Part shown: in pieces, positions 16,501 through 64,000 of the stretch
Layout of the letters: each line of letters opens with the position of its first letter
Numbering within the stretch: position 1 is the first letter of the stretch
Assembly (NCBI GenBank): GCA_002269645.1
Contig: NIVC01000001.1
Span: forward strand, 1,860,001 to 1,924,000
DNA: 64,000 nucleotides
Reading direction: 5' to 3'
From: Macrostomum lignano
Taxonomy: Eukaryota
Program-made: the position numbers and the translations under genes
Notes under the pieces: model-generated
What the model saw: the letters and a program-made list of their open reading frames with translations, nothing else
Database searches by the model: none
What the model was told of the DNA's origin: nothing

Positions 16501-18772
16501 GACTACGATTGTATCGCGCCTGGAACTTCTCCCAGGATGAGCATCGGTGACGTCCTCAAGCAGTTCACGGATGTCGACATCTGCGTGGTCACCGCCGTTG
16601 GTAGCATCCGGTCTTGGCTAATTTACACCTTCCACAACGAGTGGACCGCCGAGCAGGTCGAAGGCGGCGGCGGCGGTGGCAGGCGGCGCAGCGTAGACTA
16701 CTCAGCTGGCGGCAGCTACGAGTACAAGGACACCTACGCCTCAAATCCGCAGTACCTGCTGAGCATACCCGGAGAAAATCCCAACAACGTGTCCTTCTAC
16801 CTGGAACAGGGCGACCCGTCAACCGCCTGCTTCGAGGACAGCCAGCTGGAGATCGGCATGGACCTGTTTCACATTGAAGTCAATCGGAAAAGTCGCATCA
16901 AAGCTGCGCCCCGCGAGGCCTGGCTGGCGCTTCGAGTCAAGCCGGAGAGGCAGCCGGGCGTGCTGATGAAGGCCAGACTCGAGCCTGGCAACTATTTGAT
17001 GATGCCGTGCACTAAGGAGCCTGGGCAGCAGCAGAACTTCACGCTTAGAGCATTCAGCCAGGACGACTATTCGATGACGTGAGGATAGAGAGAGGGATAA
17101 TAAAAGTGGGATAGAGAGTGGGATAGGAAATGGGGATAGGATTTGATTTAGATAGGGAGTGGGTTCGGGAGTATAATAAGCAGTGGGAGTGGAATAAGGA
17201 GTGGGATAGGGAGTGGGATAAGGTGGGATAAGGAGGGAATCGGAAAAGGACTGGGATAGGGAGTGGGATAGAAAATCTTACTTAATAAAGTTTTCTGCGA
17301 TACATATCGGCGCCATGAAACCCGCAGACTACTGCCAGATTTGGTGCCCCAACCCACGGGCACCTGCTCCTGCTGCGAATGGAATTTATTTGGCGTTACT
17401 CGCCTCATCGTCACCAAGGTGAAAGGCGTCAATTCCTACTTGAGAACGCAAGGTAGGGTGGTCATTGGGAATTCGTTCATTCAGACTTCTCCTAAATTTA
17501 TACTTTATGCGCATGATTAGCTACTTAATAAGTAGGGCTGAAAGAATATGATAAAATTCACACATACAGGCCTGCTCGCCAGTGTCCGGATTGACTGCGA
17601 AGCCTCAGACCTGGTGAACGCCCAGAGCGGATTCGTGTACGAAGACAAGAAAGAGAAGGACACGTTCTACGTGGACTTCAAAGTGCTGCTGTATAGACAC
17701 CAGCTGCTTGACCCCATAGATATTGAGGTGAGGACTGCGGTATTTTGTACACATTGTAGAGTGATGTAGTGCCACCTGTTAGATAGGTTAGTGTCACCTG
17801 TTAGATAGGGTAGTGTCACCTGTTAGATAGGGTAGTGTCACCTGTTAGATAGGGTAGTGTCACCTGTTAGATAGGGTAGTGTCACCTGTTAGATAGGGTA
17901 GTGTCACCTGTTAGATAGGGTAGTGTCACCTGTTAGATAGGGTAGTGTCACCTGTTAGATAGGTTAGTGTCACCTGTTAGATAGGATAGTGTCACCTGTT
18001 AGATATGGTAGTGTCACCTGTTAGATAGGGTAGTGTCACCTGTTAGATAGGGCAGTGTCACCTGTTAGATAGGGTAGTGTCACCTGTTAGATAGGGTAGT
18101 GTCACCTGCTATAGATAGCGTAGTGTCACCTGTTAGATAGGGTAGTGTCACCTGTTAGATAGGGTAGTGTCACCTGCTATAGATAGGGTAGTGTCACCTG
18201 TTAGATAGGGTAGTGTCACCTGTTAGATAGGGTAGTGTCACCTGCTATAGATAGGGTAGTGTCACCTGTTAGATAGGGTAGTGTCACCTGTTAGATAGGG
18301 TAGTGTCACCTGCTATAGATAGGGTAGTGTCACCTGTTAGATAGGGTAGTGTCACCTGTTAGATAGGGTAGTGTCACCTGCTATAGATAGGGTAGTGTCA
18401 CCTGTTAGATAGGGTAGTGTCACCTGTTAGATAGGGTAGTGTCACCTGTTAGATAGGGTAGTGTCACCTGCTATAGATAGGGTAGTGTCACCTGTTAGAT
18501 AGGGTAGTGTCACCTGGTTAGTCAGGTTTTAGCCAGTCTCAACAGAATGTGAGAATCAGAATGTCAGAACGTCAGAACTCAATCCGATCCCGCAGGTGTA
18601 CAGCCAATCGGCAATTTCGTTCACCAAAAAATTTGTGGGCACAGCGGCCATCATAGACAAAGACTGCGTTGAAGAGACCCCCAAGGAGGCGCTGCTGTCA
18701 CGCAACGGTAAACAGGTGCCTGTGAAGCTCTACTGCACTGTGCAGTCGGCCAGAGATATCGATTTCTTCTGA
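13526..18772 (+). CDS. CAPN5: Calpain-5/6 (Tra-3-type) family protein with CysPc, calpain domain III and C-terminal C2 domain; predicted catalytically inactive; 654 aa
   Basis: Nine exons: 13526-13561, 13928-14379, 15190-15406, 15736-15914, 15987-16064, 16536-17078, 17328-17452, 17570-17727, 18596-18772 (1965 nt, phases consistent, all GT-AG). Motifs FVDPTFPP, WRRP, QGERGNAWF, VVIDDLLP, EFWSALLEKAYAK, EWTGAWSD, DGIFWM, NPQY. The symbol denotes the family; orthology was not tested. Confidence 0.9.
14445..15100. repeat. 27-nt minisatellite (CCCCACTAGCCCCAGCCCCCTCTCAAA), calpain intron 2
   Basis: Tandem units; the GLGLVGFER 9-aa periodicity in the ORF track confirms period 27. Confidence 0.95.
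15520..15665. repeat. (ATCATA)n, calpain intron 3
   Basis: Direct reading. Confidence 0.9.
16100..16410. repeat. 16-nt minisatellite (GGGTTGGTGATATTTC), calpain intron 5
   Basis: Period 16 (16201, 16217). Confidence 0.9.
17085..17272. repeat. Degenerate purine-rich GGGATAGG(A)GT repeat, calpain intron 6
   Basis: Recurring GGGATA about every 10-20 nt. Confidence 0.7.
17770..18515. repeat. 22-nt minisatellite (GTGTCACCTGTTAGATAGGGTA), calpain intron 8
   Basis: Period 22, about 33 copies. Confidence 0.95.
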
Positions 18773-21260: not shown

Positions 21261-28351
<7,091 letters not shown>

Positions 28352-29257: not shown

Positions 29258-32200
29258 TGTAATTGCCTCGCAATATTATTATCAATTTGTTCTAAATAGG
29301 CGAGTGAGTTATATTATAAATGTACATCTTGTGTCGCATGAGTCATGTACGCCGTACGCGTAAAACCTCAAATATATATATCGCTAACCTGGCCAGTTAG
29401 GGCCCCATGCTTGATTTTCTCGCTCAGCTTAACACGCGGCCTTGAGACTTTACAGTGGCGTCGCAAGCAAGCCCACTTTGTCCAGTCACTCATGGCTCAA
29501 TTCATCTCACTGCCACCCCCTGAGCAATTCAGCACTAGTGCAGATCAACAGAATGCCGGTAAACGCTGGAACAAATGGTCCGATCATTTTTGTGACTTTA
29601 TCGAAGCGTCAGGCATCAAAGACGAAACTCAGAAGTGCAAGCTCCTGGCCTACACGGCCGGCAGAGAAATCGCGCAAATCATTAAAGACCTGCCAGATGA
29701 CAAGAAAGACAGCCTCGAAACTCTGCTCGCAGCAATAAAAGAGCACTTCAAGGAGCGCAACAACATCGTATTTGCCCGCTATCAGTTTCGTCTATGCGTT
29801 CAGCAAACCGGAGAGCCAGTGGACTCCTGGTACTCCCGACTCAACTCAGCGGCCGAGACATGCGAGTTCTCAGCACTCAAGGACTCCCTAATCAGAGATC
29901 AGATAGTGGCGACATGCTGCTCCGATAAACTTCGGCGAAGATTGCTGCAGGAGTCCAACATCTCTCTCGGCGATGCGTTGAGACAAGCGCGCGCGTTTGA
30001 AGCAGCAGAAGAGCAGGCCACGGCCATTGAGAACTCCAGTAGCATCGCAGCAGTGCACAGAGCGGCACCGAAGCAGTTCAGAGACAGCGGAACGCGCCCG
30101 AACAGTCAGCGGGTCCCTGGCGGCCAAGCAAACAGCGGCCCAACCAGCTGCTATCGATGCGGCGAACGCGGGCACAGCTCATGCAACGCGGCAAAAGGCA
30201 AAACCTGCCTGGCATGCGGCAAGCCAAACCATCTCGTCAAAGCATGCAGACAACGCAGGCCTCAAACAAGCTCCAGCATCAACGCCGTAGCGGACAAAGA
30301 AGCTGAGGAGGTCTTCATCGATCACGATTCGCTAAATGAGGAGGCCTTCACTATCCAGTCGCAAAAAACGGCACCTAGACGCAACTCCGCCAACACTAAT
30401 CTGAGGATCGAGGGCAAGGACTTCATCGTACTCGTGGATAGTGGAGCCAGTTGCAACGTCATGAGCGAGGAGAACTTCCGGCGGCTAAGAAATGTTCGAC
30501 TGCGCAGCGCCATCCATCCAATTTTCAGCTACGGGTCCACAACGCCTCTCCAAGTCCTGGGTGTCGCTGACCTCAACGTGAGCACCGCAGCTAGCAGACA
30601 ACTAGCTTCATTCTACATCACCAAAGGCTGTGGAACCACACTACTCGGTCGAGAAACCGCTTTCAACATGGGAATTCTGCACATCCAACATCCAACAGTT
30701 GAAGTCAACTCGGTGCAGCCCACGGAAAATCTAGCCGCATCAGGTATTCAAGAGCTGTTCTCCAAGTACAGAGATGTCGACCAAGATCTTCCAACCGAAC
30801 TCCGCATCAGCAGCATCCTTGGTGAGTTTCAGTCAATCTTCGAAGGCCTTGGCTGCGTTAAGGGCGTCGAGGTCGACGTTCGTCTTCGACCAGAAGCTGT
30901 CCCAGTCTGTCACCCACCCTCCAGAGTTCCCGTCCACCAGCGGTCGGCGGTCATCGCGGAACTTCAGGCTCTGCTCGACCAAGGAATCATCGAGCGCGTC
31001 AACGGCCCGTCACCGTGGGTCTCCCGCATGGTTGTCGTCCCGAAAGAAGGCGGTGGCATCCGCATCTGCCAAGACCTGCGCGACGTCAACTCATTTGCCG
31101 TGCCAGAAAAGCAGCCCATCCCAACCTTTGAAGAGATCACGGACGAAATGGCGGGTTCCACGGTATTCAGCGAGCTCGACATCGTAAAGGCTTTCCACCA
31201 AATTCTTGTCAAACCGGAATCCCGTCACGTCTTCACCTTCAGCACCCCACTGGGTCTCATGCGACTGACCAGACTCAGCATGGGATTCACCAACGCATCC
31301 GAGATATTGCAAAGGGTTATGACAGGCGTCCTGAGCGGCCTTGACGGTGTCCGATGGGCACACGATGACATCACCGTCTTTGCGAGCACGATGGAAGAGC
31401 ACAACATCCGACTAAAACAGTGCTTCAAGCGCCTACAAGACCATGGAATCACACTCAACCCGAACAAGTGTCGCCTGGCACAGCCTTTCATCGATTTTCT
31501 TGGTATGCGCATCAGCGCACGAGGCGTTCAGCCTGCAGCCGAGAAGATCAAGGCCGTCAAAGACTTTAAGGAGCCAACAAATGTGTCAGAGCTGCGCTCA
31601 TTCCTCGGTTTGGCCACCTACCTGTCCAGGTTCGTTCCGAACTTCTCAGATCTGACGCAGCCAATGCGAGAACTGTTAAAAAAAGGTCATAAATGGTGCT
31701 GGTCAGAAAGGCAACAAGAAGCATTCCTGCAAACAAGAGCAGCGATCTGCAAGGAGAGCGTCCTGGCCTTCTTTGACGTGAATCTCCCAACAGAAGTTCA
31801 TGTGGACGCCTCACCAGTCGGCCTGGGTGCCATTCTCAGCCAGGTGGATGAGAAAGGCGTTCGCAAACCGGTCGCCTTCGCCAGCAGGTCGCTCACGCCA
31901 GTTGAGCAGCGATACGCCCAAATTGAACGCGAGGCGCTTGCGGTGAAATTCGGGTGCCTACGTTTCGAGCACTACCTCAGCGGCTGCCCAGATCTCACAG
32001 TCATCACGGATCACCGCCCATTAGTCCCGCTTTTTCAACCTGGTTCCAGGCCTCCACCAAGGATTGAACGGATGGCTTTAAGAGTGCAGCACCTCAAATT
32101 CAAGCTCATCTATCAGCCGGGGCCACAGAATCCAGCGGATGTCCTCAGTAGACAACCTGAAATGCAGACAAAGGACAACCCCGGGGAACTCCTGGACAGA

Positions 32201-33823
32201 CGCTTCATCAACGCAGTCGCCATCGGCTCTACTCCGAAAGGACTGAACTTTGCAACAATTCAGGAGGCTTCAAAGTCAGACGGCACGATCCAAGCAGCTC
32301 TATCAGCTCTACGAACTGGCCAATGGGACAAGCAGAACAGAGAACTGCGAGCCTTGTCCTGCCTGCAGCAGGAGCTTTCAGAACATGACGGCGTGCTACT
32401 ACGGAGCTCGTTGATCGTGATCCCGAGCAGCTTACGTCGGACGGTGCTCCAGCTGGCACATGCAGGCCACCAATGCTGCCGAAAAACTATGGACAGACTG
32501 CAAACCAAAGTCTGGTGGCCAGCGATGAGAAGCGACTGCCAGGCGTTCGTCCAGTCTTGCCTTCCCTGTCAAGCGACATCGCCGAAGAGCCTCGCACCGC
32601 CACCACTCTCACCGTCGCAACTTCCGGACGGAGCATGGCTGGTTCTTGGAATGGACTTTTACGGCCCAGTCCAAGGGAAAATGCTCCTGGTGACAACCGA
32701 TCTGTTTTCAAAATTTCCCGAGGTCGACATAGTCAGCTCAACATCAGCAGAGGCAGTGCTTCCGCATCTCCGGACTCTGTTTAGCAGATACGGCATCCCG
32801 TTGGAAATCGTCAGCGACAATGGACCTCCGTTTAACTCGGCAGAATTCACAAACTTCCTCTCAGAGTTCGGCATCAAGCATCGCCGGATCTGTCCGCTGC
32901 ACCCCGAGGCGAACGGAGCGACCGAGCGAGTCAACAGGTGTATCAACAAGGTCATCAGAGCGGCCATCGCAGAAGGACGCAACTGGCGCACCGCACTCGA
33001 CGACTGGCTGCTCGCTCATCGCGTCACTCCGCACTCGGCAACCGGCGTGGCACCAGCCGAACTGCTCATGGGCCGAGCTCTCAACGACGGCCTCCCGTCA
33101 ATCCAACCATCGCAGCCTGTGCAGCACGACCGCGCCGAACTCGCAAAGCGCCACGAGGCCTACAACAACCAGATGGCAGCAGGTTTCAACCGCTCCAGGA
33201 GGGCCAAGGCAGCCAATGTCAAGCCGGGTTCGGCGGTTCTTCGCAAGCGGACGAGACGCACGAAAATTCAAACGCCTTTCGAGCTCGAACCCTGGACCGT
33301 CACCGACAGGCGAGGCGATTCCTACGTCCTGCGGCAAGGCGACTGGACATGCACTCGCCACCTGACGCACATCCGGCCTCTGACAGCGACCGAGGACCCA
33401 CCACCAGAAGCGGACGCCGGCGCCGCCTCGCCGGAGCGCGGCATTGCTGAGAGGCCGCACCCGAGAGCGGCCAAGGACAAGCCTATCAGCTACAGAGTTT
33501 GACGGGTTTTGACGGGTAACTGGTGCTAAGGGCTGAGACAAGTGTTTTTTTACCCTTAATGTTTTATTCCTTTTTCCTTATCTTTTTAATCCGCATTTTT
33601 GAGCTTTTTCGTTTTTTGGGGAGAAGTGTAATTGCCTCGCAATATTATTATCAATTTGTTCTAAATAGGCGAGTGAGTTATATTATAAATGTACATCTTG
33701 TGTCGCATGAGTCATGTACGCCGTACGCGTAAAACCTCAAATATATATATCGCTAACCTGGCCAGTTAGGGCCCCATGCTTGATTTTCTCGCTCAGCTTA
33801 ACACGCGGCCTTGAGACTTTACA
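29258..33823 (+). mobile_element. Full-length Ty3/Gypsy LTR retrotransposon (Mag-like), 4566 bp, with identical LTRs
   Basis: LTRs 29258-29454 and 33627-33823 (197 bp, TGT...ACA, identical by eye); 5-bp TSD CCAGC (29253-29257 and 33824-33828); PBS-like TGGCGTCGC at 29456; PPT GGGGAGAAG 33618-33626; one intact gag-pol ORF. Confidence 0.97.
29492..33502 (+). CDS. Gag-Pol polyprotein (Gag with Cys/His knuckle, aspartic protease, RT, RNase H, integrase), 1336 aa
   Basis: First ATG outside the LTR is at 29492. Motifs: CYRCG..H...C..CGKPNHLVKAC, LVDSGAS, RICQDLRDVN, AHDD, VDASPVGLG, YAQIEREAL, HAGH..C..C, GMDF, SDNGPPF, PEANGATER. Domain order PR-RT-RH-IN is that of Gypsy. Confidence 0.95.
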   Translation: MAQFISLPPPEQFSTSADQQNAGKRWNKWSDHFCDFIEASGIKDETQKCKLLAYTAGREIAQIIKDLPDDKKDSLETLLAAIKEHFKERNNIVFARYQFRLCVQQTGEPVDSWYSRLNSAAETCEFSALKDSLIRDQIVATCCSDKLRRRLLQESNISLGDALRQARAFEAAEEQATAIENSSSIAAVHRAAPKQFRDSGTRPNSQRVPGGQANSGPTSCYRCGERGHSSCNAAKGKTCLACGKPNHLVKACRQRRPQTSSSINAVADKEAEEVFIDHDSLNEEAFTIQSQKTAPRRNSANTNLRIEGKDFIVLVDSGASCNVMSEENFRRLRNVRLRSAIHPIFSYGSTTPLQVLGVADLNVSTAASRQLASFYITKGCGTTLLGRETAFNMGILHIQHPTVEVNSVQPTENLAASGIQELFSKYRDVDQDLPTELRISSILGEFQSIFEGLGCVKGVEVDVRLRPEAVPVCHPPSRVPVHQRSAVIAELQALLDQGIIERVNGPSPWVSRMVVVPKEGGGIRICQDLRDVNSFAVPEKQPIPTFEEITDEMAGSTVFSELDIVKAFHQILVKPESRHVFTFSTPLGLMRLTRLSMGFTNASEILQRVMTGVLSGLDGVRWAHDDITVFASTMEEHNIRLKQCFKRLQDHGITLNPNKCRLAQPFIDFLGMRISARGVQPAAEKIKAVKDFKEPTNVSELRSFLGLATYLSRFVPNFSDLTQPMRELLKKGHKWCWSERQQEAFLQTRAAICKESVLAFFDVNLPTEVHVDASPVGLGAILSQVDEKGVRKPVAFASRSLTPVEQRYAQIEREALAVKFGCLRFEHYLSGCPDLTVITDHRPLVPLFQPGSRPPPRIERMALRVQHLKFKLIYQPGPQNPADVLSRQPEMQTKDNPGELLDRRFINAVAIGSTPKGLNFATIQEASKSDGTIQAALSALRTGQWDKQNRELRALSCLQQELSEHDGVLLRSSLIVIPSSLRRTVLQLAHAGHQCCRKTMDRLQTKVWWPAMRSDCQAFVQSCLPCQATSPKSLAPPPLSPSQLPDGAWLVLGMDFYGPVQGKMLLVTTDLFSKFPEVDIVSSTSAEAVLPHLRTLFSRYGIPLEIVSDNGPPFNSAEFTNFLSEFGIKHRRICPLHPEANGATERVNRCINKVIRAAIAEGRNWRTALDDWLLAHRVTPHSATGVAPAELLMGRALNDGLPSIQPSQPVQHDRAELAKRHEAYNNQMAAGFNRSRRAKAANVKPGSAVLRKRTRRTKIQTPFELEPWTVTDRRGDSYVLRQGDWTCTRHLTHIRPLTATEDPPPEADAGAASPERGIAERPHPRAAKDKPISYRV

Positions 33824-35200: not shown

Positions 35201-38017
35201 AAAGCAGTTGACAGCGAGAGTAAGAATTGTTGACTTGGACTTTAGAGTGACTGCATGGGCGTGGGTATGCATGCAATGAAACCCGCGTGTTGAACCAAAT
35301 ATTAATTAGCTGACCGTTTCAAATTTCATCAAATGTCCTCAATTCCTGTCTTGATCCCTCTTAAAAAAGGATTGAGTTGAGAAGCTTTTTACAGTTCACC
35401 AAGCACCTTTCCCAACACTTAGGGGAATTCTCCCACAATACAAACTGAATTGAACCATCTATTGAAGAAGTACAACTCACATAATGTGGTCTCAACTGTA
35501 TACATGCAGCGCTTCGGTCGCATTTTTAATTAATTATGCATGCAGATTGGGTGAACACTTTTTGCGTAAAAATACGCAGATTAGGAAAGGTGTATCTACC
35601 TTGTATTTTAGCTCTGTAAATGTATATTAAATTAATGTGGTCTTTGAGGACATGCATGTACAAGAAAATGAAGGAAATGTATACTGTGTAATGTACGCAC
35701 CAAGGACTATACTTTATTAGAAGGACTTAACTATTTAATTGGTTTTGTATTTACATTATCCTACATATAAATATTGAGGGCCTAAAAATCTAAAAAATGG
35801 CACGGCTCGACGCCTTCGTTTCAAGAATCTGTTTTATCATTGTGTTACACATTTTGTCACACAGCCATAAGCTGAGATTTTGTGCTGAAAAAAACGGAAA
35901 AAACTGCTATCTCTGTAATGTATTCTTTTCTGTAAAACCTGCTTCCTTAAATTTCCAAGAAACTTACGGGCTCTAAAATTTTCCAAGAAACCTCGGCGCG
36001 CACGCGTACATACAATATATACACGCATAGTGTAACTCGGTCTAGGCCTATGTAGCTTACATTTACAACTACTTCTCTCAGCTGATAGTTGGGCAAAGCT
36101 TGTGATGTGACTGAGTGACCAAGGTAATGTTCCCTCGGTCTTAACCTGCGTCCCCTGGGTGCTTATTATACAGGTACACGCCAAAGGCGTGACAGCCATG
36201 CACTAGCCTCCTGCGTAAGAAAGTATACCCGGGAAAACTTTCGCTAATGAGACGGGGATCCAAGCCTGCTACGGGCAACGAATTTGGAGCCATATTTTCA
36301 AGTCGTAGTGCCGGCTGATCTAAGGGACTGCGAGGTGCCAATAAAGTAGCAATAGGCCAGGGGATTCTTATGACCTTGGATTGATCAGTGCGGTTGAGCA
36401 GGGCGGCTATATGCTATTCCTTGGTTTTCCAGGGTTCTGATTCTTCTGAGACAGATGCAGCGCTAAACTGAGATTTCCTCGTCAACTGGCCATTCATTTT
36501 CGATTGGCCAGTTAATTCATACATTTTCGATTAAGTATGAGCTATCCAGACTCCACAGTGATTCACGGTTGTCTCAGAGCTGTTTCTGTTAATTTCAGTT
36601 CGACACTGCACCGACACGACACTACATTGATATCCAATGATTATTCGTCAAAACGATGGCCAATAAGTTTGGAAACAAATGAGTTAAAAAGCACATGTTA
36701 AAAGCATAGAATGATTGCAAGCAACTTACCAGTAATTAGGTCTCTAGACCGACAGGTGAACTCTCGATGTGTTTGTGGCGGTACGGGCAATTCAAGGCGG
36801 CTTAGCCGCATGGGCACTGGCGTCGCTTGTTGTCGCGGAGGCGAGTCGAACTGATGTTTGGGATTGAGAGGCTGTTGTGGGGGTGGGTGATAAAGAAGGT
36901 CATATTGAGGACAACGAACTGCTTATATTCATGTAAAGAGCTGGAATCACGTCCCATGCGCGTGACTCATATGATGCATATTAGACCTTGAACTGCCCTG
37001 GGTCGGCGTCGCCAAGCAACCGAGTGACATCATTGCCCAGCCGTAACGTGATTGGCTATAAAAAGATAGGGTGGTGGGTGCGCGGTTTAGATAGGGAAAA
37101 TTAGGACATCATTATATGATTCACATGACTTGGGAAAAATGGATTGCAGGAGAGGGAGTTTATTGATGCGTTCCAGTTCAATGATTTTGAACAAAGAAGC
37201 GAAGGATTAGGTGGCCCGAAAGGGGAGTCATCCGATGAGCACCTGTGGAAGGGGCCTAGATATCTAGGGTTAGGATCGCGTTGGGCCGTGCAGGGGAAAA
37301 TATCAAAAGTATCACGAAAGTTTAATAGGGGCCTAGCACCGCTGTTGCACGGTCACATGTAACGTGTTTACGTTCAAATTTCAAGCGCACTTACGGGTGT
37401 CCTGATTGGCTAGAGGGTCCTGTCAGCATAAAACTCCATGGCCTGCCTTTTACATGTATACATGTAACTGTAGGCAGGGGGATTAATTTGGAGTTTGTTG
37501 AGTTTTGTACTACAATGTAGGACTTGTTGGTTTTATTAGTGTTGTATGTTTCTTTTTAGACGACATTATAATTTTATATTATAGAGAGTGTTAATTTTAG
37601 GAACAGAGAGACTTACACCATCAAAGTACTGGGTCGGCGTGGGCATCTATAACGCCATATTATCTGTGGACTCAAAGCTGTCCAATATTTCTTGACTGTG
37701 TTGCAGCAACTGCTGAGCAGTCTCTTTAGTTCTGCGGACATGCGTATGAGAAGACAGTTACTTAAGAATTTTTACGCAGTCTACATATTTGTGTGCTTTA
37801 GCGGTTTGATCAAATGTTTTAGTAGTCAAGTTAACTTTTGTTATGTTAAATGCTAAAGCGCATACACTATACTAATGTATATACTCGTACTAAAAAAGTC
37901 CTCGTTTGGATAAATTAATTTTTTTTAAAACTAATAAAAAACCAGCATTAAAAATGTAGTATTGCCATTTAGCTGGAGCATCCGTTCAAATTTATGCTTT
38001 ATAATATGTAGTACATC

Positions 38018-40209
38018 CCCAGTGAAAAAAATGATATGGATTCCATGTGGATTTTTCATATGAAATCCATATGTGCATTTGTCTCCGTCCATCCATGTGG
38101 AATCAAGATATGGATTCCACATCGAAGATCCACATGGAAGTAATTATGTATTTCACATAGAATCCACATTGTCATTGAGTAGCAGCCATTATACTGGTTG
38201 CCATAATAAATTGTTGCATCTTAAATTGCAAAATAATACCAGATCTCAAAATTTCATACAAACCCCAGATCTCAATACCATATAAAAAAACTGAAACACA
38301 GATAAAACACCAAAGCCAAAAAATATTTATGCACAAAAATATATTCAAAAAAGGATGTCAATAAGTAAGGTGTATTTATGTACAGTAGTAAGTCACTGGC
38401 ACACAAAGAATAAACACACTGATGTAGATATTGATACCTTTAGAGTTGCGCATATGATATAATATATAATTTGAAACTGACATTGTCAATAGCATTAATT
38501 AACAATATTATAATGCACCAGAATTAGAATGCTCAGAAACAAGCTGCTGCCAATTGCCAGAATGCTGCTTCTTCAGGTCAGGTGAGAAACCTTAGAAAAG
38601 AAATGAGTTAAAATACAGAATTTTATTAGTATCTGTGAATAACAGATAAATGTACATTTTGATGACAGAAAAAAATCAGTTTGTAACTAAAACTTACCAC
38701 TGCTTCACAAAAGGTAGCATTCTGGATATTAAATTCAAATTCCAAGTAGCTCTGCATGCTTCTTCAAAGGCAAGACCAAGGTGATACTCAAGTTTTAGGA
38801 TAAGCCACATGATGTTAGGCTGAAATGAAACAAAAAAATAGTTGTTGCCAATTAAGATTGATAGATTATATTAGTATACTTTTAAGGATGAATACTTAAT
38901 AAAGACTATTTCAAAAGTAACAAGGCCTAAGTCAATAAATAGAAATACCAATAAAATAATGAGTATAGAAATTATTATTATATTTGTTTATAGATTTAAT
39001 TTTTTTATTTTAAAATTGGCTCTAGACCATATAGTTTTTAGGCAAAACAATGCAAGTGTCATTTATTTGCTAGTATGATAAAACATTAGGCCTAAGTCTA
39101 AATAGGCATTATGCCCCATGGCTATTAAATTCTAGACTTGGCCTAGCCCTACATTTGATCAAATTTACAATAATCATTATTTATTCATAATAACAACCTT
39201 AGTTGCTAGGCTAGTTATGCCAAAAGCAAGTTGCAAGCATAATTGCAAAGAATTTAATTATTAGATCTAATAACATTGTTTTTAAAAATGCAACAAGTCC
39301 AAAAGATGCTAACAGGCTTTCTTGCAGAAAATCATAATTTATAGATTTAACTGAATAGCTAGATTGACTACTCAATTCACAAAGTCAAGCTAGTCCTAAC
39401 CTTAATTAAAATAGAACTAGACATAACTTGATAGTTATGGCTTAAAATAGGCTTAATAAGCATACATATAAACAGATAGGTAGGACTAAGAGGAAATGAG
39501 CTTCTGTAGGCCTATTGAAGTTAAAAATGAGTATCTAAACTATGCTATGGGCATGGCCATAGGATTCCTAGAAATTGGATAAATAATTTTATCATGGATT
39601 TTACCAAAAGTAGGCCTATCTATGAAAAAATACTGATTTATCTAATTTCGAATCCCATGGAGGCCATGGCCTTATAAGTGTTGCCTATAGGTAAGGCCTA
39701 CTAAAATTTATAAGGTGCTTAAATAGCCATAAACAAGGCAATTTATCTTTCAAGGCCTTGAACCAAGACATTGACGAATAAAAATAAAATAAATTCAATT
39801 TAAAAAAGCACGAAACATTTTTTACTGTCCACTTCTATTTTGTCTATTATAACAAACAGCGTCTAATTTTTCGATTATAATTTAGCTTAAAGTTATTAAG
39901 TTTTACTTAAAAGCACATAAATATAATAATTAATTTAATTAATTTTATAAAAACATCTGAATGTAGTATGTCTCTGTTTTTTATCGAAGTGGATTCCATG
40001 TTGAATCAATATTCGCGTATTTCTGATGAATTCCTTGTAAAATCCACATCTACATTAGGATAGTAAAAATAGAAAATGAATGCATAAAAAATACTTTGCG
40101 TACCATTATGTAATCTTTAATTCATTAATTTGCAAAAATAAAAGAAACATTTAAATTCCACATGGCCACGTGGAACCCACGTGGAATCCATAAATCATTT
40201 TTCACTGGG
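38018..40209. mobile_element. Non-autonomous EnSpm/CACTA-like DNA transposon (CCCAGTG TIRs, 2-bp TSD)
   Basis: Left end CCCAGTGAAAAAAATGATATGGATTCCATGTGG; right end reverse complement CCCAGTGAAAAATGATTTATGGATTCCACGTGG; TC on both flanks (38016-38017, 40210-40211); subterminal repeats of TGGATTCCA/ATCCAC. No intact transposase seen. Confidence 0.75.
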
Positions 40210-41878
40210 TCACAACTACAAGGTCAGCCAAAGGCCTTATTAGTTACGATGCATGTATTTACTCCGCATGCTAGCCTAACTCTTGCATTACATAGTTTTA
40301 TAAATTTATACTTACAATTTCAATCCCATTCCGATTTAAATGTAACGGATTGTTTAAATGTGCTTTGGATTTAATAACAAATTGTTATCCTATTTGGGGG
40401 TTAACCTATTTGCTTTCTGTAATCATTTGGGCCATCAAAATATGTAATTTAACATCTTGCGATGCTGAAGAAAAGTTTGTAAGTAGCGTAGTAACTTGGC
40501 TGATATTTGTTTAATACCAATAAAGGGTTGCGTTTAAATATAATACAATTTGAATCGGGTTTCTTTCCAAGCGTGTCTGAGTGCTGCGGAGCTCAGAGCA
40601 GAGTGTTTAATCGTTGTCATATCTCATATGTTAGACTCGATAGATCGATATTCATATATCTGCATAGGTCAGTGTGAATATATATACATTGATTATAATT
40701 AGCTCATTAGAAGTTAGATTCAAACTCATTTTATCAATCTGAGTCACTAATCACAATATATAGGCAGTGCTTATCCCCACGGTGCCGTAGGAATAATTTG
40801 TCTTATTAGTGCACTCAATGAGAGGTTCGGTGATTACGAGTAAAATTATACTCTGCCCGGTAATCGCGCTGCTATCCCGTCTACGACTCCGAATTCTTTA
40901 GGCCGCGTGATACGCTGAAATTAATTAAAGAACCACCTAGAAAATATGATGAATGCATGTAAGGTTTTATATAGTACAAGTAAATGAGGGCACTATTACA
41001 TATATACATTTATGAGGGGCGCAATTAAATGGCTGCTGCAAAATAAAAGGGGCGCCTAATTGCATGATCCTCTGTCCAATCGTTCTTGGTTCCCGTCTAT
41101 TTTTTATACAAGACAAACAATGTTATGTATGTCATGCACATGTTATAGCACGCAATAATAGCACACCATGAGTTATACAATGTAAACGTGATGGCCCATG
41201 CTGCACGATAGGCAGTCAGTTTCCGGATGAGGGCAAAGCTATAGTATATCCGGATACCGGCCCTTTGATACACTGCTGTCATTAATTTACACTTTGAACC
41301 ACGTACACCTATGAACTACGTATTATCAGGTTTTCTTTGCCTGTTGCAACTGCAAAATACACCGTAGTAATTAACTGTCAGCGGTATAGTAGTGTATAGC
41401 GTTAGCCATCTGCCAATTTTAAATAAAGAATCTAACTAAGCAGCAGGCTTATAGATACTTCAAAATAAAAAGCAATGATGCTATGCTCGACCGAAGCTTT
41501 AGGAAAATGTCCTAAAGTTCATGTTTCGTTGTTAAATTGTGTAGAACGTGTGAAAATACGTACCAATTCAAAGTGCTTTTCCAAGAAAAACTTTAAATAT
41601 TGATCAAATTTTAATTCAATACTATTCCAACTGTACGATATTTCAACAACACTAGGGTAGGGCTTAATAACAACAAGCACAAACAAAAGTTGCTTAGTTG
41701 TCTCTTTGCGTCAGATAAATGCTTTTCGTTTCTTCATAAAAATCGAATGAATTTTTAATGACGAACATAAATAAAAGTTACAACAGCATTCTGCCGTGAA
41801 CAGCTCTTATACTTAAATTATTATAAATTTCAATTCAACTGAAGCATTCTTTAACTTGTATTCGATTGAACAGAAATA

Positions 41879-58466
<16,588 letters not shown>

Positions 58467-58475
<9 letters not shown>

Positions 58476-58960
58476 CTAATCTGTAGCTAATCTGTAGCTA
58501 ATCTGTAGCTAATCTATAGCTAATCTATAGCTAATCTATAGCTAATCTATAGCTAATCTGTAGCTAATCTATAGCTAATCTATAGCTAATCTGTAGCTAA
58601 TCTGTAGCTAATCTATAGCTAATCTATAGCTAATCTGTAGCTAATCTATAGCTAATCTATAGCTAATCTGTAGCTAATCTATAGCTAATCTATAGCTAAT
58701 CTATAGCTAATCTGTAGATAATCTATAGCTAATCTGTAGCTAATCTGTAGCTAATCTATAGCTAATCTATAGCTAATCTGTAGCTAATCTATAGCTAATC
58801 TATAGCTAATCTGTAGAATCACCAGCAATCTATAGCTAATCTATAACTAATCTGTAGAATCACCAGCAATCAATAGCTAATTCTATTACTAATCTGTAAA
58901 AACACCAGCAATCTATAGCTAATCTGTATAATGGCCACCCATCTATAGCTAATCTGTAGA
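58467..58960. repeat. 11-nt repeat (AATCTATAGCT) starting at the OSBPL9 stop codon
   Basis: The first unit contains the TAG at 58473-58475. Confidence 0.95.
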
Positions 58961-60149
58961 ATCACCCAATTAACCCAGAAGCTGAATCGCAGTTATTGTT
59001 AATGCAATTTCCCTAAATTTTATCCTGTTCAGCTCTAGCCTATATTCAGTGTAAAATGTTAAATGCAAACCTAGATGTTTAATTACTGTTTATTATATTT
59101 TGCTTTAGAGTGGGTAATTTGGTGTCTACTCTATCCCTTACTGGTAATTTTGAATTGTAATCCTTCTTAAAGAACATTAATTTTAATTCCTGAACTGTTC
59201 GCATGATGCTACTTGTCAGTAGACCGATAAGTTAATAGTATGATGCGAATATTCTTTGATGATTTTGTTTAGCTTCAAAGTTATTATATTTTGAAGTAAT
59301 CAACACAAACGATTAATTCTGGTCAATAATTTGTTTTGTGTGTAAATTTGTTACAATAATGATTATAATATTATAAATCATTAGTGAGTTGCAATGCTCA
59401 AAAGGATTACATATTTTTGTTGACTAATCTTATAAAAATATCAGTACATTATACTACTTAGTTAGTAAGTAGTTCTAATGCTGCAGTTGCTGATTTTCCA
59501 TACACAGACGAGGCAATATCTATGTGCATATATTCACCAGCACTCAGTAGTACTATTGATGGCCATATCTCTGTTCTGTGACTTTGATTACAGTGTTGCT
59601 TCTATCCTATCATAGCTGTAAATATCCCTTCCCTGCAGTTCATCAATTTACTTCAACTATCTAATAACAGACCGATACACACACAACGCCGCTTTCAAGG
59701 TTATGATGATGCTCTATTGATTGTATTAAAATTATTTATTCTGTTTAGTAATTGTTCTTTTATGTTGTTTATGATGCCTGAATATTGACACATAATTAAC
59801 TGCAATAGTACTTTTGATGATTTTTATTGCTTATTAACATTTTGCTTAACAATTGCAGTAAATATCTATCTGGCAAATTTATATATCCTTTTATCTTTTC
59901 TGGCCTCGCTTTCATTCTGTGCATGCGTCAGACTGTCTCTGCTGCGTGAGTACTGTGCGCGACATATGTGATCGAGAAAATGAGTCAATGGATTGATGAT
60001 GCTTAATAATAATATATTGATTATTATTATTATTATTATTATACTGTGACACTGAACTGAATCCAACCCATGTCTAGTTAATGTCAGTTCTGTCTCTTCT
60101 CTTTTTTTAATATCTATGTTATTTGCTGTTGATCCCAGCTAACCCCCTA

Positions 60150-60735
60150 CAAATCTCAGCTAGTCCCGGACAGATCTCAGCTAGTCATGGACAGATCTCA
60201 GCAAGTCCCGGACAGATCTCAGCTAGACATGGACAGATCTCAGCTAGTCATGGACAGATCTCAGCTAGTCATGGACAGATCTCAACTAGTCATGGACAGA
60301 TCTAAGCTAGTCCCGGACAGATCTAAGCTAGTCCCGGACGGATCTCAGCTAGTCCCGGACAGATCTCAGCTAGTCCCGTACAGATCTCAGCTAGTCCCAG
60401 ACAAATCTCAGCTAGTCCCAGACAAATCTCAGCTAGTCCCAGACATATCTCAGCTAGTCCCAGACATATATCTCAGCTAGTCCCGTACAGATCTCAGCTA
60501 GTCCCAGACATATCTCAGCTAGTCCCGGGCAGATCTCAGCTAGTCCCGGACAGATCTCAGCTAGTCCCGGGCAGATCTCAGCTAGTCCCGGACAGATCTC
60601 AGCTAGTCCCGGACAGATCTCAGCTAGTCCCGGACAGATCTCAGCTAGTCCCGGACAGATCTCAGCTAGTCCCGAACAGATCTCAGCTAGTCCCGGACAG
60701 ATCTCAGCTAGTCCCGGACAGATCTCAGCTAGTCC
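60150..60735. repeat. 21-nt minisatellite (AGCTAGTCCCGGACAGATCTC) upstream of CDKAL1
   Basis: Period 21 (60601, 60622). Confidence 0.95.
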
Positions 60736-60868
60736 AGTCCCCAGTCTAAAAGAGTCCAGAGTCCTTAATTATTCTTAATGTGGTCCCAAATCAGTTCTTA
60801 GTTAGTCCTTAATGTGTCATAATATAGTCCCAAAGTTAATCCTCAATTTCCCATCCCGGAGTTTGCAG

Positions 60869-61009
60869 GCCGAGCCAGTAGAGGCGGACATCGAGGATCT
60901 TCTGAAGTTGGCGTCAGCTGACGATGATGCCGCAGTAGGCGAGTTCCAGCTTCGCCAGAGTCGCCGATCGAACGTCGTGGTGGCCCGGCCGAAGAGACTT
61001 CGACAGCAA

Positions 61010-61041
<32 letters not shown>

Positions 61042-63759
61042 ACAGCAATCGGACGCCTGCACCAACGGGCTCGCTAGCAAAGTCCCCGGCACCGAATGCG
61101 TCTATATTCGCACCTGGGGCTGCGCTCACAACACGTCGGACGGGGAATACATGGCCGGCTTGTTGTCCGCCTACGGCTATTCGGTCACCACCGACCAGCC
61201 CGACCAGGCCGACCTGTGGCTGCTCAACTCCTGCACGGTGAAGACTCCCGCTGAGCATCACGCCAGGAATGAGATCCAGGCCGCCAGGCAGGCCGGCAAG
61301 GCCATTGTGGTGGCCGGCTGCGTGCCGCAGGGCCAGCCGGATGCCGCTTTCCTTCGCGGCGTCAGCCTGCTAGGCGTTGGTCAAGTTGGCCGAGTTGTCG
61401 AAGTTGTCGAAGAGACTCTGCGCGGCAACTCGGTGCGCCTGCTGGGCAAGGAGAAGTCGGCGACTAACGGCGGCAGGCTGCCGGGTTGGTGCCGGGGCGC
61501 GCATGTACACTTTTGGGAGGCGCATTGGCTATCGCTTGTTGCTGTGGCCGCCTCACTCAGCATCTCTTTTCTCACTCCTGTGCTCACCATCTTCCCCCCC
61601 CTACCGTCTCCCCTCCTCTCACCTACCTCTCACATGTTTCTTCCTCTTTTTCGCTACCTACCCTCCTCTTACTCTCTACCTACCCTCCTCTTACTCTCTA
61701 CCTACCCTCATATTACTCTCTACCTATCCTCCTCTTACTCTCTACCTACCCTCCTCTTACTCTCTACCTACCCTCCTCTTACTCTCTACCTACCCTCCTC
61801 TTACTCTCTACCTACCCTCCTCTTACTCTACCTACCCTCCTCTTACTCTCTACCTACCCTCCTCTTACTCTCTACCTACCCTCCTCTTACTCTCTACCTA
61901 CCCTCCTCTTACTCTCTACCTACCCTCCTCTTACTCTACCTACCCTCCTCTTACTCTCTACCTACCCTCCTCTTACTCTCTACCTACCCTCCTCTTACTC
62001 TCTACCTACCCTCCTCTTACTCTCTACCTACCCTCATCTTACTCTCTACCTACCTTCCTCTTACTCTCTACCTACCCTCCTCTTACTCTCTACCTACCCT
62101 CCTCTTACTCTCTACCTACCCTCCTCTTACTCTCTACCTACCCTCCTCTCACTCTCTACCTACCCTCCTCTTACTCTCTACCTACCCTCCTCTCACTCTC
62201 TACCTACCCTCCTCTTACTCTCTACCTACCCTCATCTTACTCTCTACCTACCCTCCTCTTACTCTCTACCTACCCTCCTCTCACTCTCTACCTACCCTCA
62301 TCTTACTCTCTACCTACCCTCCTCTTACTCTCTACCTACCCTCCTCTTACTCTCTACCTATCCTCATCTTACTCTCTACCTACCCTCCTCTTACTCTCTA
62401 CCTACCCTCCTCTTGCTCTCTACCTACTCTCCTCTTCTCTACCTACCCTCCTCTTTCTCATTACTGTCTCATTACACTTCTGCGTAATATTTCTTAATCT
62501 TACTTCATCTCTTACCCTTCTGTCACTACCTGTTACTGAATGACCTTCCATCGTCCCCTATATATTTGTGTTTTGCCAGTCCCCACAGCCGCACTCATCT
62601 CTGCGCTTGACTGCTTGATTGCAGGCCCCCCGCTGGACATGCCAAAGATTCGCCGCAATCCCCTAATAGAAATTGTGCCAATCAACTCTGGCTGCCTGAA
62701 CAGCTGCACCTATTGCAAAACTAAGCACGCCAGGGGCCAGCTGTCCAGCTATCAGCCCGATCAGATTGTACATCGGGTAGCAACCGCCTTCGCCGAGACC
62801 CCGGACTGTGGCGGCGGGGCGCGCGAAGTTTGGCTAACTAGCGAAGACACGGGCGCCTACGGCATCGACATCGGTGTCGACCTGCCCAGCCTGCTAGACG
62901 CCGTTGTCGACGCCATCCCCAGCGGCGGCATGCTGCGGCTGGGCATGACCAATCCGCCTTACATACTGCGCCACCTGCCCGCCGTGGCCCGCCTGCTGGC
63001 GCACCCCCGCGTGTACTCCTTCCTGCACGTGCCCGTCCAGTCCGGCTCGGACGCTGTGCTGGGCGAGATGCGCCGGGAGTACACTCTGGCCGACTTTTGC
63101 ACTGTTGTTGACTATCTGCGCGACCGGGTGCCCGGCGGGGTTACCATAGCAACTGATGTTATTGCCGGCTTCCCTACGGAAACTGAGGACGACTTTGAGG
63201 CCACGTGTAGGCTTATTGAGAAGTGAGTTATCCAGGATAGTTCTCTGCTCCTGTTCGCGTCTTTTAGTGGGTTGCAGTGCAGTGCTTCTGTCTCCTAGTG
63301 GGTTGTCTGTGCTGTGCTTCTGTCTCCTAGTGGGTTGTCTGTGCTGTGCTTCTGTCTCCTAGTGGGTTGCCTGTGCTGTGCTTCTGTCTCCTAGTGGGTT
63401 GTCTGTGCTGTGCTTCTGTCTCCTAGTGGGTTGCCAGTGCTGTGCTTCTGTCTCCTAGTGGGTTGCCTGTGCTGTGCTTCTGTCTCCTAGTGGGTTGCCA
63501 GTGCTGTGCTTCTGTCTCCTAGTGGATGGCCTCTCCGCTAACCCTTCAGTCTGACATTAATCCACATGCACACTGCCGCCAATGCCGCAGGTACAAATTC
63601 CCTGTGCTGTTCATCAACCAGTTCTTCCCCCGGCCGGGCACCCCGGCGGCCCGGATGCACCGAGAGGCAACGCCGGCCGAAGTGAAAGACCGAACCCGGC
63701 GATTAAACCAGCTGTTCCGCTCCTACACCAGCTATGACGATCAGCTGGGCAGCGTGCAG
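60869..63759 (+). CDS. CDKAL1: Threonylcarbamoyladenosine tRNA methylthiotransferase (radical SAM, MtaB/CDKAL1); start codon absent from the first visible exon, 3' end beyond the window
   Basis: Exons 60869-61484 (DIEDL...[17 protein letters not shown]...[10 protein letters not shown]...VAGCVPQ), 62625-63222 ([64 protein letters not shown]), 63591-63759 ([20 protein letters not shown]). Phases 1, 2 and 0 are consistent. Confidence 0.95.
61660..62450. repeat. 22-nt pyrimidine minisatellite (TCTACCTACCCTCCTCTTACTC), CDKAL1 intron
   Basis: Period 22 (61741, 61763). Confidence 0.95.
63280..63525. repeat. 32-nt minisatellite (GGTTGTCTGTGCTGTGCTTCTGTCTCCTAGTG), CDKAL1 intron
   Basis: Period 32 (63301, 63333). 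Confidence 0.95.
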
Positions 63760-64000
63760 GTCAGTTTTATTACTAATTTGCTTCTACTGCCACTGTTAGT
63801 AGTCTATAGAGTAAGCATTGAATGGAAGCGTATTAGATTGAATTTTACACATGGGGCTTGGTGCTGGCGCCCCTTGGTGCTGGCGCTCCCATAGACGCCC
63901 CCTGATAAAAAATCCTGACTACATCCCGATGATTCAATACTTCAGAGCGTAGATATTGCTTAGTTAAAACATTAGTTATTAGTTTTGCAATTTCGCCTAT

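What the first reader, a model, noticed from the sequence alone, without database searches (positions are those of the whole stretch)
60840..60910. CDKAL1 may get its start codon from a trans-spliced leader ending in AUG
Seen: the first recognisable CDKAL1 exon begins right after an acceptor (TTTGCAG, AG at 60867-60868) in phase 0 with GCC GAG CCA GTA GAG GCG GAC ATC GAG GAT. That is only about 6 codons before the conserved N-terminal DIED motif, and no ATG precedes it. I found no convincing phase-0 ATG exon in the 2.4 kb back to the OSBPL9 stop. Established: flatworm spliced-leader RNAs end in AUG, which can act as the initiator Met. Inference: SL-AUG joined here yields [12 protein letters not shown] with G at +4, so translation of this tRNA-modifying enzyme would depend on trans-splicing. 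The close same-strand OSBPL9-CDKAL1 arrangement would fit an operon.
Basis: partly seen in the sequence, partly recalled or inferred. Interest (0 to 1): 0.75.

Follow-up and report, generated by a model that had tools for sequence, protein, structure and literature searches.

The report
Spliced-leader start codon for flatworm CDKAL1
In this Macrostomum lignano (flatworm) DNA the CDKAL1 gene most likely takes its start codon from the AUG at the end of the trans-spliced leader, an ordinary example of a mechanism known in flatworms since 2006 and not yet shown by RNA data at this locus.

Summary
The window is Macrostomum lignano DNA or a very close relative. The CDKAL1 protein matches UniProt A0A1I8INS3 exactly over aa 1-22, and 382 of 387 residues match over aa 75-461. 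The observation mostly holds. Exon 1 starts at 60869, right after TTGCAG (60863-60868), in phase 0, six codons before DIED. TTGCAG fits the published M. lignano trans-splice acceptor motif [T/C]TNCAG. The published M. lignano gene model also starts at this residue with no Met. One claim is wrong: an in-frame ATG at 60812-60814 lies 19 codons upstream with no stop between. That stretch looks non-coding: GC 0.40 versus 0.63 in the exon, and codon log-likelihood -7.6 bits against at least +4.2 for every exon-1 window. An ATG before a stop arises by chance in 10-20% of cases. The M. lignano leader ends in ATG. Joined at 60869, it is the first AUG of the mRNA and is in frame. The next in-frame AUG, at aa 96, would remove a conserved cluster cysteine. 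So an SL-donated start is the best explanation (about 0.75), but no transcript data could be reached. The operon idea is borderline. The mechanism is already known (Cheng et al. 2006), so interest is low.

The parts
60863..60868 (+). 3' splice acceptor TTGCAG, the proposed SL trans-splice site (AG at 60867-60868)
   Evidence: Sequence read. It matches the published M. lignano trans-splice acceptor motif [T/C]TNCAG (PMC8629364). It is the only such motif in 60000-60900 on the + strand.
60842..60858 (+). Pyrimidine-rich tract upstream of the acceptor (CTCAATTTCCCATCCCG)
   Evidence: Positions -25 to -4 are 64% pyrimidine. The confirmed cis acceptor of exon 2 has the same value; exon 3 has 55%.
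60869..61484 (+). CDKAL1 coding exon 1: [11 protein letters not shown]..., a polyQ linker, then the UPF0004 domain. The donor is G|GTTGGT.
   Evidence: The first 22 aa are identical to UniProt A0A1I8INS3, which starts at this residue without Met. GC is 0.63.
62625..63222 (+). CDKAL1 exon 2 (radical SAM core, CLNSCTYC)
   Evidence: Splice junctions and continuous frame; Pfam PF04055.
63591..63759 (+). CDKAL1 exon 3. The gene continues beyond the end of the window.
   Evidence: alignment to P0121.
60812..60814 (+). Genomic in-frame ATG in the presumed outron, 19 codons upstream of exon 1. This is the rival start codon. Its context is weak (T at -3, T at +4).
   Evidence: The 19 codons score -7.6 bits in the codon LLR, against at least +4.2 for every exon-1 window. 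GC is 0.40. The chance of an ATG before a stop is 0.10-0.20.
60803..60805 (+). In-frame TAG that closes the frame just upstream of the 60812 ATG
   Evidence: translation.
61151..61153 (+). Next in-frame ATG (aa 96 of the SL-initiated protein). It lies downstream of the first conserved cluster cysteine (C86 in TWGC).
58476..60868 (+). Intergenic stretch or presumed outron between the OSBP-like stop codon and the acceptor. It holds tandem arrays at 58467-58966 and 60131-60735 and a single ATTAAA at 59725.
58005..58475 (+). Last coding exon of the upstream oxysterol-binding-protein gene (stop TAG at 58473-58475)

Best explanation
The CDKAL1 pre-mRNA of this Macrostomum lignano locus is SL trans-spliced at the TTGCAG acceptor (AG at 60867-60868). 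The 35-nt leader ends in AUG and is joined directly to GCC at 60869. That AUG becomes the first AUG of the mature mRNA and is in frame, so translation starts there and gives [13 protein letters not shown].... The genomic in-frame ATG at 60812 lies in the outron and is discarded.

Shown here:
- the identity of the organism and of the gene;
- the acceptor, its phase and its match to the motif;
- the open frame from 60869;
- the absence of any other usable AUG.

Inferred, not shown:
- that trans-splicing actually occurs at this site;
- that ribosomes start at the leader's AUG.
For: 1. Organism. The best hit is M. lignano CDKAL1. Against UniProt A0A1I8INS3 the window protein is identical over aa 1-22 and differs at 5 of 387 positions over aa 75-461.
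2. Leader. The M. lignano SL is CGGTCTCTTACTGCGAAGACTCAATTTATTGCATG and about 30% of genes are trans-spliced (PMC8629364). The Fig. 2c legend of PMC10468722 calls the final ATG of the Macrostomum SL a translation start codon.
3. Acceptor. TTGCAG fits the species' trans-splice motif [T/C]TNCAG, which sits at the junction. It is the only such motif in 900 nt.
4. Independent model. The UniProt model P0121 begins [12 protein letters not shown] with no Met, at the base after the AG. This is what is expected if transcript evidence ended at a trans-splice site.
5. Composition switches at the junction. GC is 0.40 upstream and 0.63 in the exon. The codon LLR is -7.6 bits for the 19 upstream codons, +14.8 for the first 19 exon codons, and at least +4.2 for every exon-1 window.
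6. AUG positions in the modelled mRNA. The SL AUG is the first AUG and is open for all 462 codons in the window. The next three AUGs are out of frame. The next in-frame AUG is aa 96, after the conserved Cys86 of the N-terminal cluster.
7. Orthologues place the Met 0-14 residues before DIED. The SL start gives 7 and the 60812 ATG would give 26.
8. No ATG-initiated phase-0 exon with a decent donor exists in the 2.4 kb upstream.
9. Use of the flatworm SL 3'-terminal AUG as initiator Met is established (Cheng et al. 2006 J Biol Chem 281:733, as cited in PMC9851317 and PMC12582326).
Against: - No SL-containing read, cDNA or peptide was available. The N-terminal protein search, the SL-junction DNA scan and the exact-protein look-ups all returned nothing. 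The exon-only control scan was also empty, so these negatives carry no information.
- An in-frame genomic ATG at 60812 with an open frame into the exon offers a trans-splicing-independent start.
- Only about 30% of M. lignano genes are trans-spliced, so the prior is moderate.
- A consensus donor (GTGAGT at 59946) exists upstream, so cis-splicing of a non-coding 5' exon to this acceptor is not excluded.
- The Met-less UniProt model could in principle be a truncated prediction.
Confidence: 0.75

Rival explanations
1. The mRNA is not trans-spliced. Transcription starts upstream of 60812, the AG at 60868 is not used, and translation starts at the genomic ATG 60812. The product is CDKAL1 with a 19-aa N-terminal extension ([19 protein letters not shown]).
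For: The ATG at 60812 is in frame with no stop before the exon. About 70% of M. lignano genes are not trans-spliced (PMC8629364).
Against: - The extension has non-coding composition and codon usage. GC is 0.40 and the LLR is -7.6 bits, lower than every exon-1 window and typical of stop-free non-coding windows.
- An ATG before a stop arises by chance in 10-20% of positions.
- The context is weak (T at -3, T at +4).
- An out-of-frame ATG at 60778 lies upstream of it.
- The published model does not include the extension.
- Orthologues have 0-14 residues before DIED, not 26.
- A motif-perfect acceptor with a pyrimidine-rich tract at exactly the composition boundary would be a coincidence.
Confidence: 0.12
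2. An unrecognised cis-spliced upstream exon, in the intergenic DNA or further away, supplies the ATG and a few N-terminal codons to the acceptor at 60868.
For: The acceptor would serve cis-splicing just as well. Parasitic flatworms share acceptors extensively between cis- and trans-splicing (PMC12582326). A GC-richer island at 59900-59990 carries a perfect GTGAGT donor at 59946.
Against: - Of the 67 ATG-to-phase-0-GT segments in 58476-60868, the best are AT-rich and hydrophobic with GTAATT or GTCAGT donors.
- The ATG at 59923 before the GTGAGT donor is out of phase. Joined to 60869 it would stop after 11 codons.
- The family's N-terminus is short, which leaves little room for an extra coding exon.
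- The UniProt model has no such exon.
Confidence: 0.08
3. This copy is a silent or decaying duplicate in the polyploid M. lignano genome and has no functional start at all.
For: M. lignano is a hidden polyploid with many duplicated genes (PMC10468722). The other copy or model (P0121) differs by a frame-shifted 50-residue stretch.
Against: The window copy is open across three exons with canonical splice sites. It keeps all the catalytic cysteines. It also keeps the conserved basic VVxRxxRxR-like motif that the frame-shifted P0121 segment lacks.
Confidence: 0.04

Closest known systems
Flatworm mRNAs whose initiator methionine is the 3'-terminal AUG of the spliced leader (Cheng, Cohen, Ndegwa & Davis 2006, J Biol Chem 281:733; Schistosoma mansoni)
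   Same: The leader ends in AUG. The acceptor lies directly in front of the second codon of a conserved ORF. The SL AUG is in frame and is the only usable start. [quoted passage not shown]
   Different: The species is different (free-living Macrostomum lignano) and so is the gene (CDKAL1). Here there is no cDNA or translation evidence. An in-frame genomic ATG also lies 57 nt upstream in the presumed outron.
Macrostomum lignano SL trans-spliced genes and operons (Wudarski et al. 2017, PMC5730564; Ustyantsev & Berezikov 2021, PMC8629364)
   Same: The acceptor has the [T/C]TNCAG motif. The gene is evolutionarily conserved, and that class is enriched among trans-spliced genes. A same-strand upstream gene lies across repeat-rich intergenic DNA.
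   Different: The trans-spliced status of this gene was not retrievable. The repeat-adjusted distance measured from the stop codon (1270 nt) exceeds their 1 kb operon threshold unless the upstream 3' UTR has at least about 270 nt of non-repeat sequence.
CDKAL1 / eukaryotic-archaeal MtaB-type tRNA t6A37 methylthiotransferase
   Same: It has the N-terminal DIED motif, a basic stretch, the UPF0004 domain with three cysteines, and the radical SAM CxxxCxxC. It is 57-66% identical to animal orthologues.
   Different: It has a polyQ linker (19 Q). Its start codon is probably not encoded at the locus. The C-terminal TRAM domain and membrane anchor lie outside the window.

Membership tests
SL-AUG-initiated flatworm mRNA (Cheng et al. 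2006 class) | The organism has an SL RNA whose exon ends in AUG | tested here: met
   The window protein is 382/387 identical to M. lignano CDKAL1 outside one frame-shifted stretch. The M. lignano SL ends ...TTGCATG (PMC8629364). No SL gene lies in the window itself.
SL-AUG-initiated flatworm mRNA (Cheng et al. 2006 class) | [quoted passage not shown] | not testable with these tools
   No M. lignano transcript data were reachable (empty; the control scan was also empty). CDKAL1 is not listed in the held supplements. Indirect support: UniProt A0A1I8INS3 starts Met-less at this base, and the acceptor matches [T/C]TNCAG.
SL-AUG-initiated flatworm mRNA (Cheng et al. 2006 class) | The SL AUG is in frame with the conserved ORF, and the trans-spliced mRNA has no other usable in-frame AUG | tested here: met
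   In the modelled SL + exon mRNA, the AUG at nt 33 is the first AUG and is open for 462 codons. The next in-frame AUG is aa 96, after the conserved Cys86.
SL-AUG-initiated flatworm mRNA (Cheng et al. 2006 class) | The protein actually starts at the SL-derived Met | not testable with these tools
   This needs N-terminal proteomics, ribosome profiling or a reporter assay.
CDKAL1 / e-MtaB methylthiotransferase | N-terminal UPF0004 (MTTase) domain with three conserved cysteines | tested here: met
   PF00919, 6.3e-21. Cysteines at aa 86, 123 and 152.
CDKAL1 / e-MtaB methylthiotransferase | Radical SAM core with CxxxCxxC | tested here: met
   PF04055, 4e-16. CLNSCTYC at aa 230.
CDKAL1 / e-MtaB methylthiotransferase | C-terminal TRAM domain and tail anchor | not tested
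   The gene runs off the window at 64000. The near-identical P0121 continues for 114 more residues and has a hydrophobic stretch near its C-terminus.
M. lignano operon (criteria of PMC8629364) | Adjacent genes on the same strand with no opposite-strand gene between them | tested here: met
   The OSBP-like gene ends at 58475 (+) and CDKAL1 starts at 60869 (+). Only short spurious ORFs lie between them.
M. lignano operon (criteria of PMC8629364) | Repeat-adjusted distance of 1 kb or less between the upstream 3' end and the downstream trans-splice site | tested here: inconclusive
   The distance from the stop codon is 2393 nt, of which 1123 nt are tandem repeats, leaving 1270 nt. The poly(A) site is unknown. 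There is no AATAAA and one ATTAAA at 59725, which would give about 490 nt.
M. lignano operon (criteria of PMC8629364) | The downstream gene is SL trans-spliced, or polycistronic precursor reads exist | not testable with these tools
   No RNA data were available.

The most novel reading that the evidence does not exclude
The locus keeps two alternative starts. Trans-spliced mRNA would use the SL AUG and give the canonical short N-terminus. Non-trans-spliced (or outron-retaining) mRNA would use the in-frame genomic ATG at 60812 and give a 19-residue, partly hydrophobic N-terminal extension. Trans-splicing would then switch the CDKAL1 isoform or its localisation, rather than merely supplying a start.
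Probability: 0.06. Interest if true: 0.35.

Novelty: new member of a known kind. Interest (0 to 1): 0.15.

Why it matters
The practical value is for annotation. Gene finders that need a genomic ATG will mis-start or truncate this gene. The UniProt models for it are either Met-less (A0A1I8INS3) or start at the internal Met (A0A1I8IMF7). In Macrostomum genomes the leader's ATG has to be added when coding sequences are built for trans-spliced genes.

Biologically, production of a conserved tRNA-modifying enzyme would be tied to SL trans-splicing. That mechanism has been known in flatworms for about 20 years and probably applies to many genes, so confirming it here would answer no open question.

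Tried and rejected
1. Protein search with the first 48 residues, to find transcript-derived proteins starting [12 protein letters not shown] or carrying the SL-encoded peptide. No candidate was found. The database indexes only cluster representatives, and the representative (P0001) lacks the N-terminus.
2. Exact scan of the metagenome contigs for the SL-exon junction (TTATTGCATG+GCCGAGCCAGTAGAGG). Zero hits. The control scan with exon sequence alone also gave zero hits, so that collection does not hold this organism and the negative means nothing.
3. Exact-protein contig look-ups for P0001 and for two genomic ORFs of the locus. None is on record.
4. Search for CDKAL1 and OSBPL9 in the supplementary tables of PMC5816591 and PMC5173321, and a full-text search for 'Macrostomum lignano' + 'CDKAL1'. 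Nothing was found. Wasik et al. 2015 is not held.
5. Search for the SL sequence in the window with up to 3 mismatches, and an Rfam scan. No SL RNA gene or other known RNA was found.
6. A cis-spliced ATG exon in the intergenic DNA. All candidates were listed and rejected for lack of a convincing one. The only consensus donor (GTGAGT at 59946) is out of phase.
7. The in-frame ATG at 60812 as the true start. It was considered and ranked low on composition, codon usage, chance expectation and orthologue N-terminal lengths.

Full report
**What is in the sequence.** I read 58000-64000. gagTTTGCAG ends with AG at 60867-60868. GCC GAG CCA GTA GAG GCG GAC ATC GAG GAT follows from 60869 and reads [10 protein letters not shown], six codons before DIED. 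Three exons join in one open frame through canonical GT...AG introns: 60869-61484, 62625-63222 and 63591-63759. The 461-residue product has a UPF0004 domain (6.3e-21) and a Radical_SAM domain (4e-16). Its homologues are threonylcarbamoyladenosine tRNA methylthiotransferases, that is CDKAL1, from across animals. The gene runs off the end of the window.

**Organism.** The best hit by far is Macrostomum lignano CDKAL1 (P0001, UniProt A0A1I8IMF7). Its cluster-mate P0121 (A0A1I8INS3, 575 aa) is identical to the window protein over residues 1-22. Over residues 75-461 it differs at only 5 of 387 positions. Residues 24-73 of P0121 equal the window read in the +1 frame, which implies a pair of compensating indels in that copy or assembly. 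The window's own frame carries the basic ...[11 protein letters not shown]... stretch, which matches ...VVPRVRRR... in orthologues. The window frame is therefore the biologically sensible one. The window is M. lignano or a very close relative.

The statement that no ATG precedes the exon is wrong. In the same frame there is an ATG at 60812-60814 and no stop up to 60869. It reads [19 protein letters not shown]|[11 protein letters not shown]. The closing in-frame stop is TAG at 60803-60805.

I tested whether this stretch looks coding:
- GC is 0.40, against 0.63 for exon 1. The 30-nt GC profile steps from about 0.3 to about 0.6 across 60830-60869.
- I trained a codon log-likelihood model on other exons of the window against non-coding trinucleotide frequencies. 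It gives -7.6 bits for the 19 upstream codons and +14.8 for the first 19 exon codons. No exon-1 window scores below +4.2. Of stop-free non-coding windows, 16% score at least as high as the extension.
- Walking upstream in frame from arbitrary positions in the AT-rich DNA of this window meets an ATG before a stop in 20% of cases, and in 10% at AG| positions. The figure is 19% in shuffles of the local sequence.
- The context of this ATG is weak (T at -3, T at +4).

The ATG is real, but it is what chance would give and it sits in non-coding-like sequence.

**Is 60868/60869 a trans-splice site?** Ustyantsev & Berezikov (PMC8629364) give three relevant facts:
- The M. lignano SL is CGGTCTCTTACTGCGAAGACTCAATTTATTGCATG.
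- About 30% of genes are trans-spliced, with enrichment for conserved genes.
- The top motif at trans-splice junctions is [T/C]TNCAG.

TTGCAG at 60863-60868 fits that motif. It is the only instance on the + strand in 60000-60900, against about 2.4 per kb in the window. A pyrimidine-rich tract precedes it, comparable to those of the two confirmed cis acceptors. The UniProt model P0121 starts without methionine at the residue encoded by 60869-60871. That is expected if the transcript evidence behind the model ended at a trans-splice junction, and it is hard to explain otherwise. This evidence is indirect, and I could not obtain direct evidence. An N-terminal protein search found nothing. A junction scan of the metagenome contigs and its exon-only control were both empty. 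Exact-protein look-ups found nothing. CDKAL1 does not appear in the held supplements or in any held paper on M. lignano.

**What the SL AUG would do.** I modelled the SL joined to the exons. The leader's AUG at nt 33-35 is the first AUG of the mRNA. It is in frame and open through all 462 codons available, with G at +4. The next AUGs (window positions 60924, 60927, 61096) are out of frame and have short ORFs. The next in-frame AUG is residue 96 (61151). It lies downstream of Cys86 in TWGC, the first of the three cysteines of the N-terminal MTTase domain, so starting there would give a defective enzyme. Orthologues place their Met 0-14 residues before DIED. The SL start gives 7 and the 60812 ATG would give 26.

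**Alternative cis exons.** I listed every ATG-initiated open segment in 58476-60868 that ends at a phase-0 GT. There are 67, and none has both a good donor and coding-like sequence. The one consensus donor in the region (GTGAGT at 59946, inside a GC-richer island) follows an ATG at 59923 in the wrong phase. Joined to 60869 it would stop after 11 codons. A non-coding 5' exon cis-spliced to the same acceptor cannot be excluded, but it would not supply a start.

**Operon remark.** The upstream same-strand gene is an oxysterol-binding-protein family member (PF01237, 3e-62). I did not test whether it belongs to the OSBPL9 subfamily. The distance from its stop codon to the acceptor is 2393 nt. Tandem arrays take up 1123 nt of that, leaving 1270 nt. 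The published operon criterion is 1 kb or less after subtracting repeats, measured from the 3' end of the upstream transcript. The poly(A) site is unknown here. There is no AATAAA and one ATTAAA at 59725. If that one is used, the adjusted distance is about 490 nt. The operon idea is possible but undecided.

**Comparison with what is known.** Use of the flatworm SL 3'-terminal AUG as initiator methionine was shown in Schistosoma mansoni by Cheng et al. (2006). According to PMC9851317 it is in frame in 28% of trans-spliced transcripts and required by more than 40 cDNAs. PMC12582326 notes that all reported flatworm SLs end in ATG. The Macrostomum genome paper PMC10468722 calls the final ATG of the SL a translation start codon and kept it on reads for that reason. 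This locus is therefore a further, plausible, unverified example of a known mechanism in a species where trans-splicing is common. I rate the SL-AUG explanation at about 0.75. The rivals are the 60812 genomic start at about 0.12, a hidden cis exon at about 0.08, and a dead duplicate at about 0.04.

**Verdict.** I class it as a new member of a known kind, with low interest (0.15). Its main value is as an annotation caveat. The decisive test is simple: map SL-containing RNA-seq reads to 60869.

Noticed in passing
window 29345-33502 (+), with the same ORF start repeated at 33714: An LTR retrotransposon with a long open gag-pol frame of 1385 aa. Pfam on two pieces found RVT_1, RT_RNaseH, Integrase_H2C2 and rve. 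The identical 36-residue ORF starts at 29345 and 33714 suggest two LTR copies. I did not extract or assemble the element.
   Followed up: partly
window 60932-61090, compared with UniProt A0A1I8INS3 (P0121) aa 24-73: The published M. lignano CDKAL1 model reads about 50 residues in the +1 frame of the window sequence ([22 protein letters not shown]...[13 protein letters not shown]). This implies two compensating indels in that copy or assembly. The window frame keeps the conserved basic motif, so the UniProt segment is probably an assembly or annotation error, or a divergent duplicate.
   Followed up: partly
window 56000-56771, 57387-57963, 58467-58966, 60131-60735, 61642-62459, 63265-63532: Nearly every intron and intergenic stretch near these genes holds a long, well-conserved minisatellite, with periods of 11-32 nt, 8-40 copies and 89-96% matches. 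The 22-mer array in CDKAL1 intron 1 keeps the exon-1 frame open, which produces a spurious 561-aa genomic ORF.
   Followed up: no
window 59900-59990 (+): A GC-richer island in AT-rich intergenic DNA holds an ATG at 59923 followed 23 nt later by a perfect GTGAGT donor at 59946. It is out of phase with CDKAL1 exon 1. It may be a non-coding 5' exon or transcription start region, or it may be chance. Unexplained.
   Followed up: partly
window 61004-61048 (+): A CAG/CAA repeat encodes 19 consecutive glutamines in the linker between the DIED/basic N-terminus and the UPF0004 domain of CDKAL1. The listed orthologues lack it.
   Followed up: no
window 13865-17082 (+) and 26565-28351 (+): Other genes in the window: a calpain (Peptidase_C2 2e-42, Calpain_III 3e-15) and an arrestin-domain protein (Arrestin_N 6e-12, Arrestin_C 3.5e-10). 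I did not examine their 5' ends for SL-type starts.
   Followed up: partly
window 48630-51050: About 2.4 kb of CT/GT-rich low-complexity DNA (CTGTCTGTCT-like units) with extreme AT skew (about -0.65). It gives long spurious ORFs in three frames.
   Followed up: no
window 38000-48000: A 10-kb block with about 30% GC and no ORF of 110 aa or more. It contrasts with the 45-55% GC elsewhere. It is either a large intron of the OSBP-like gene or intergenic DNA.
   Followed up: no
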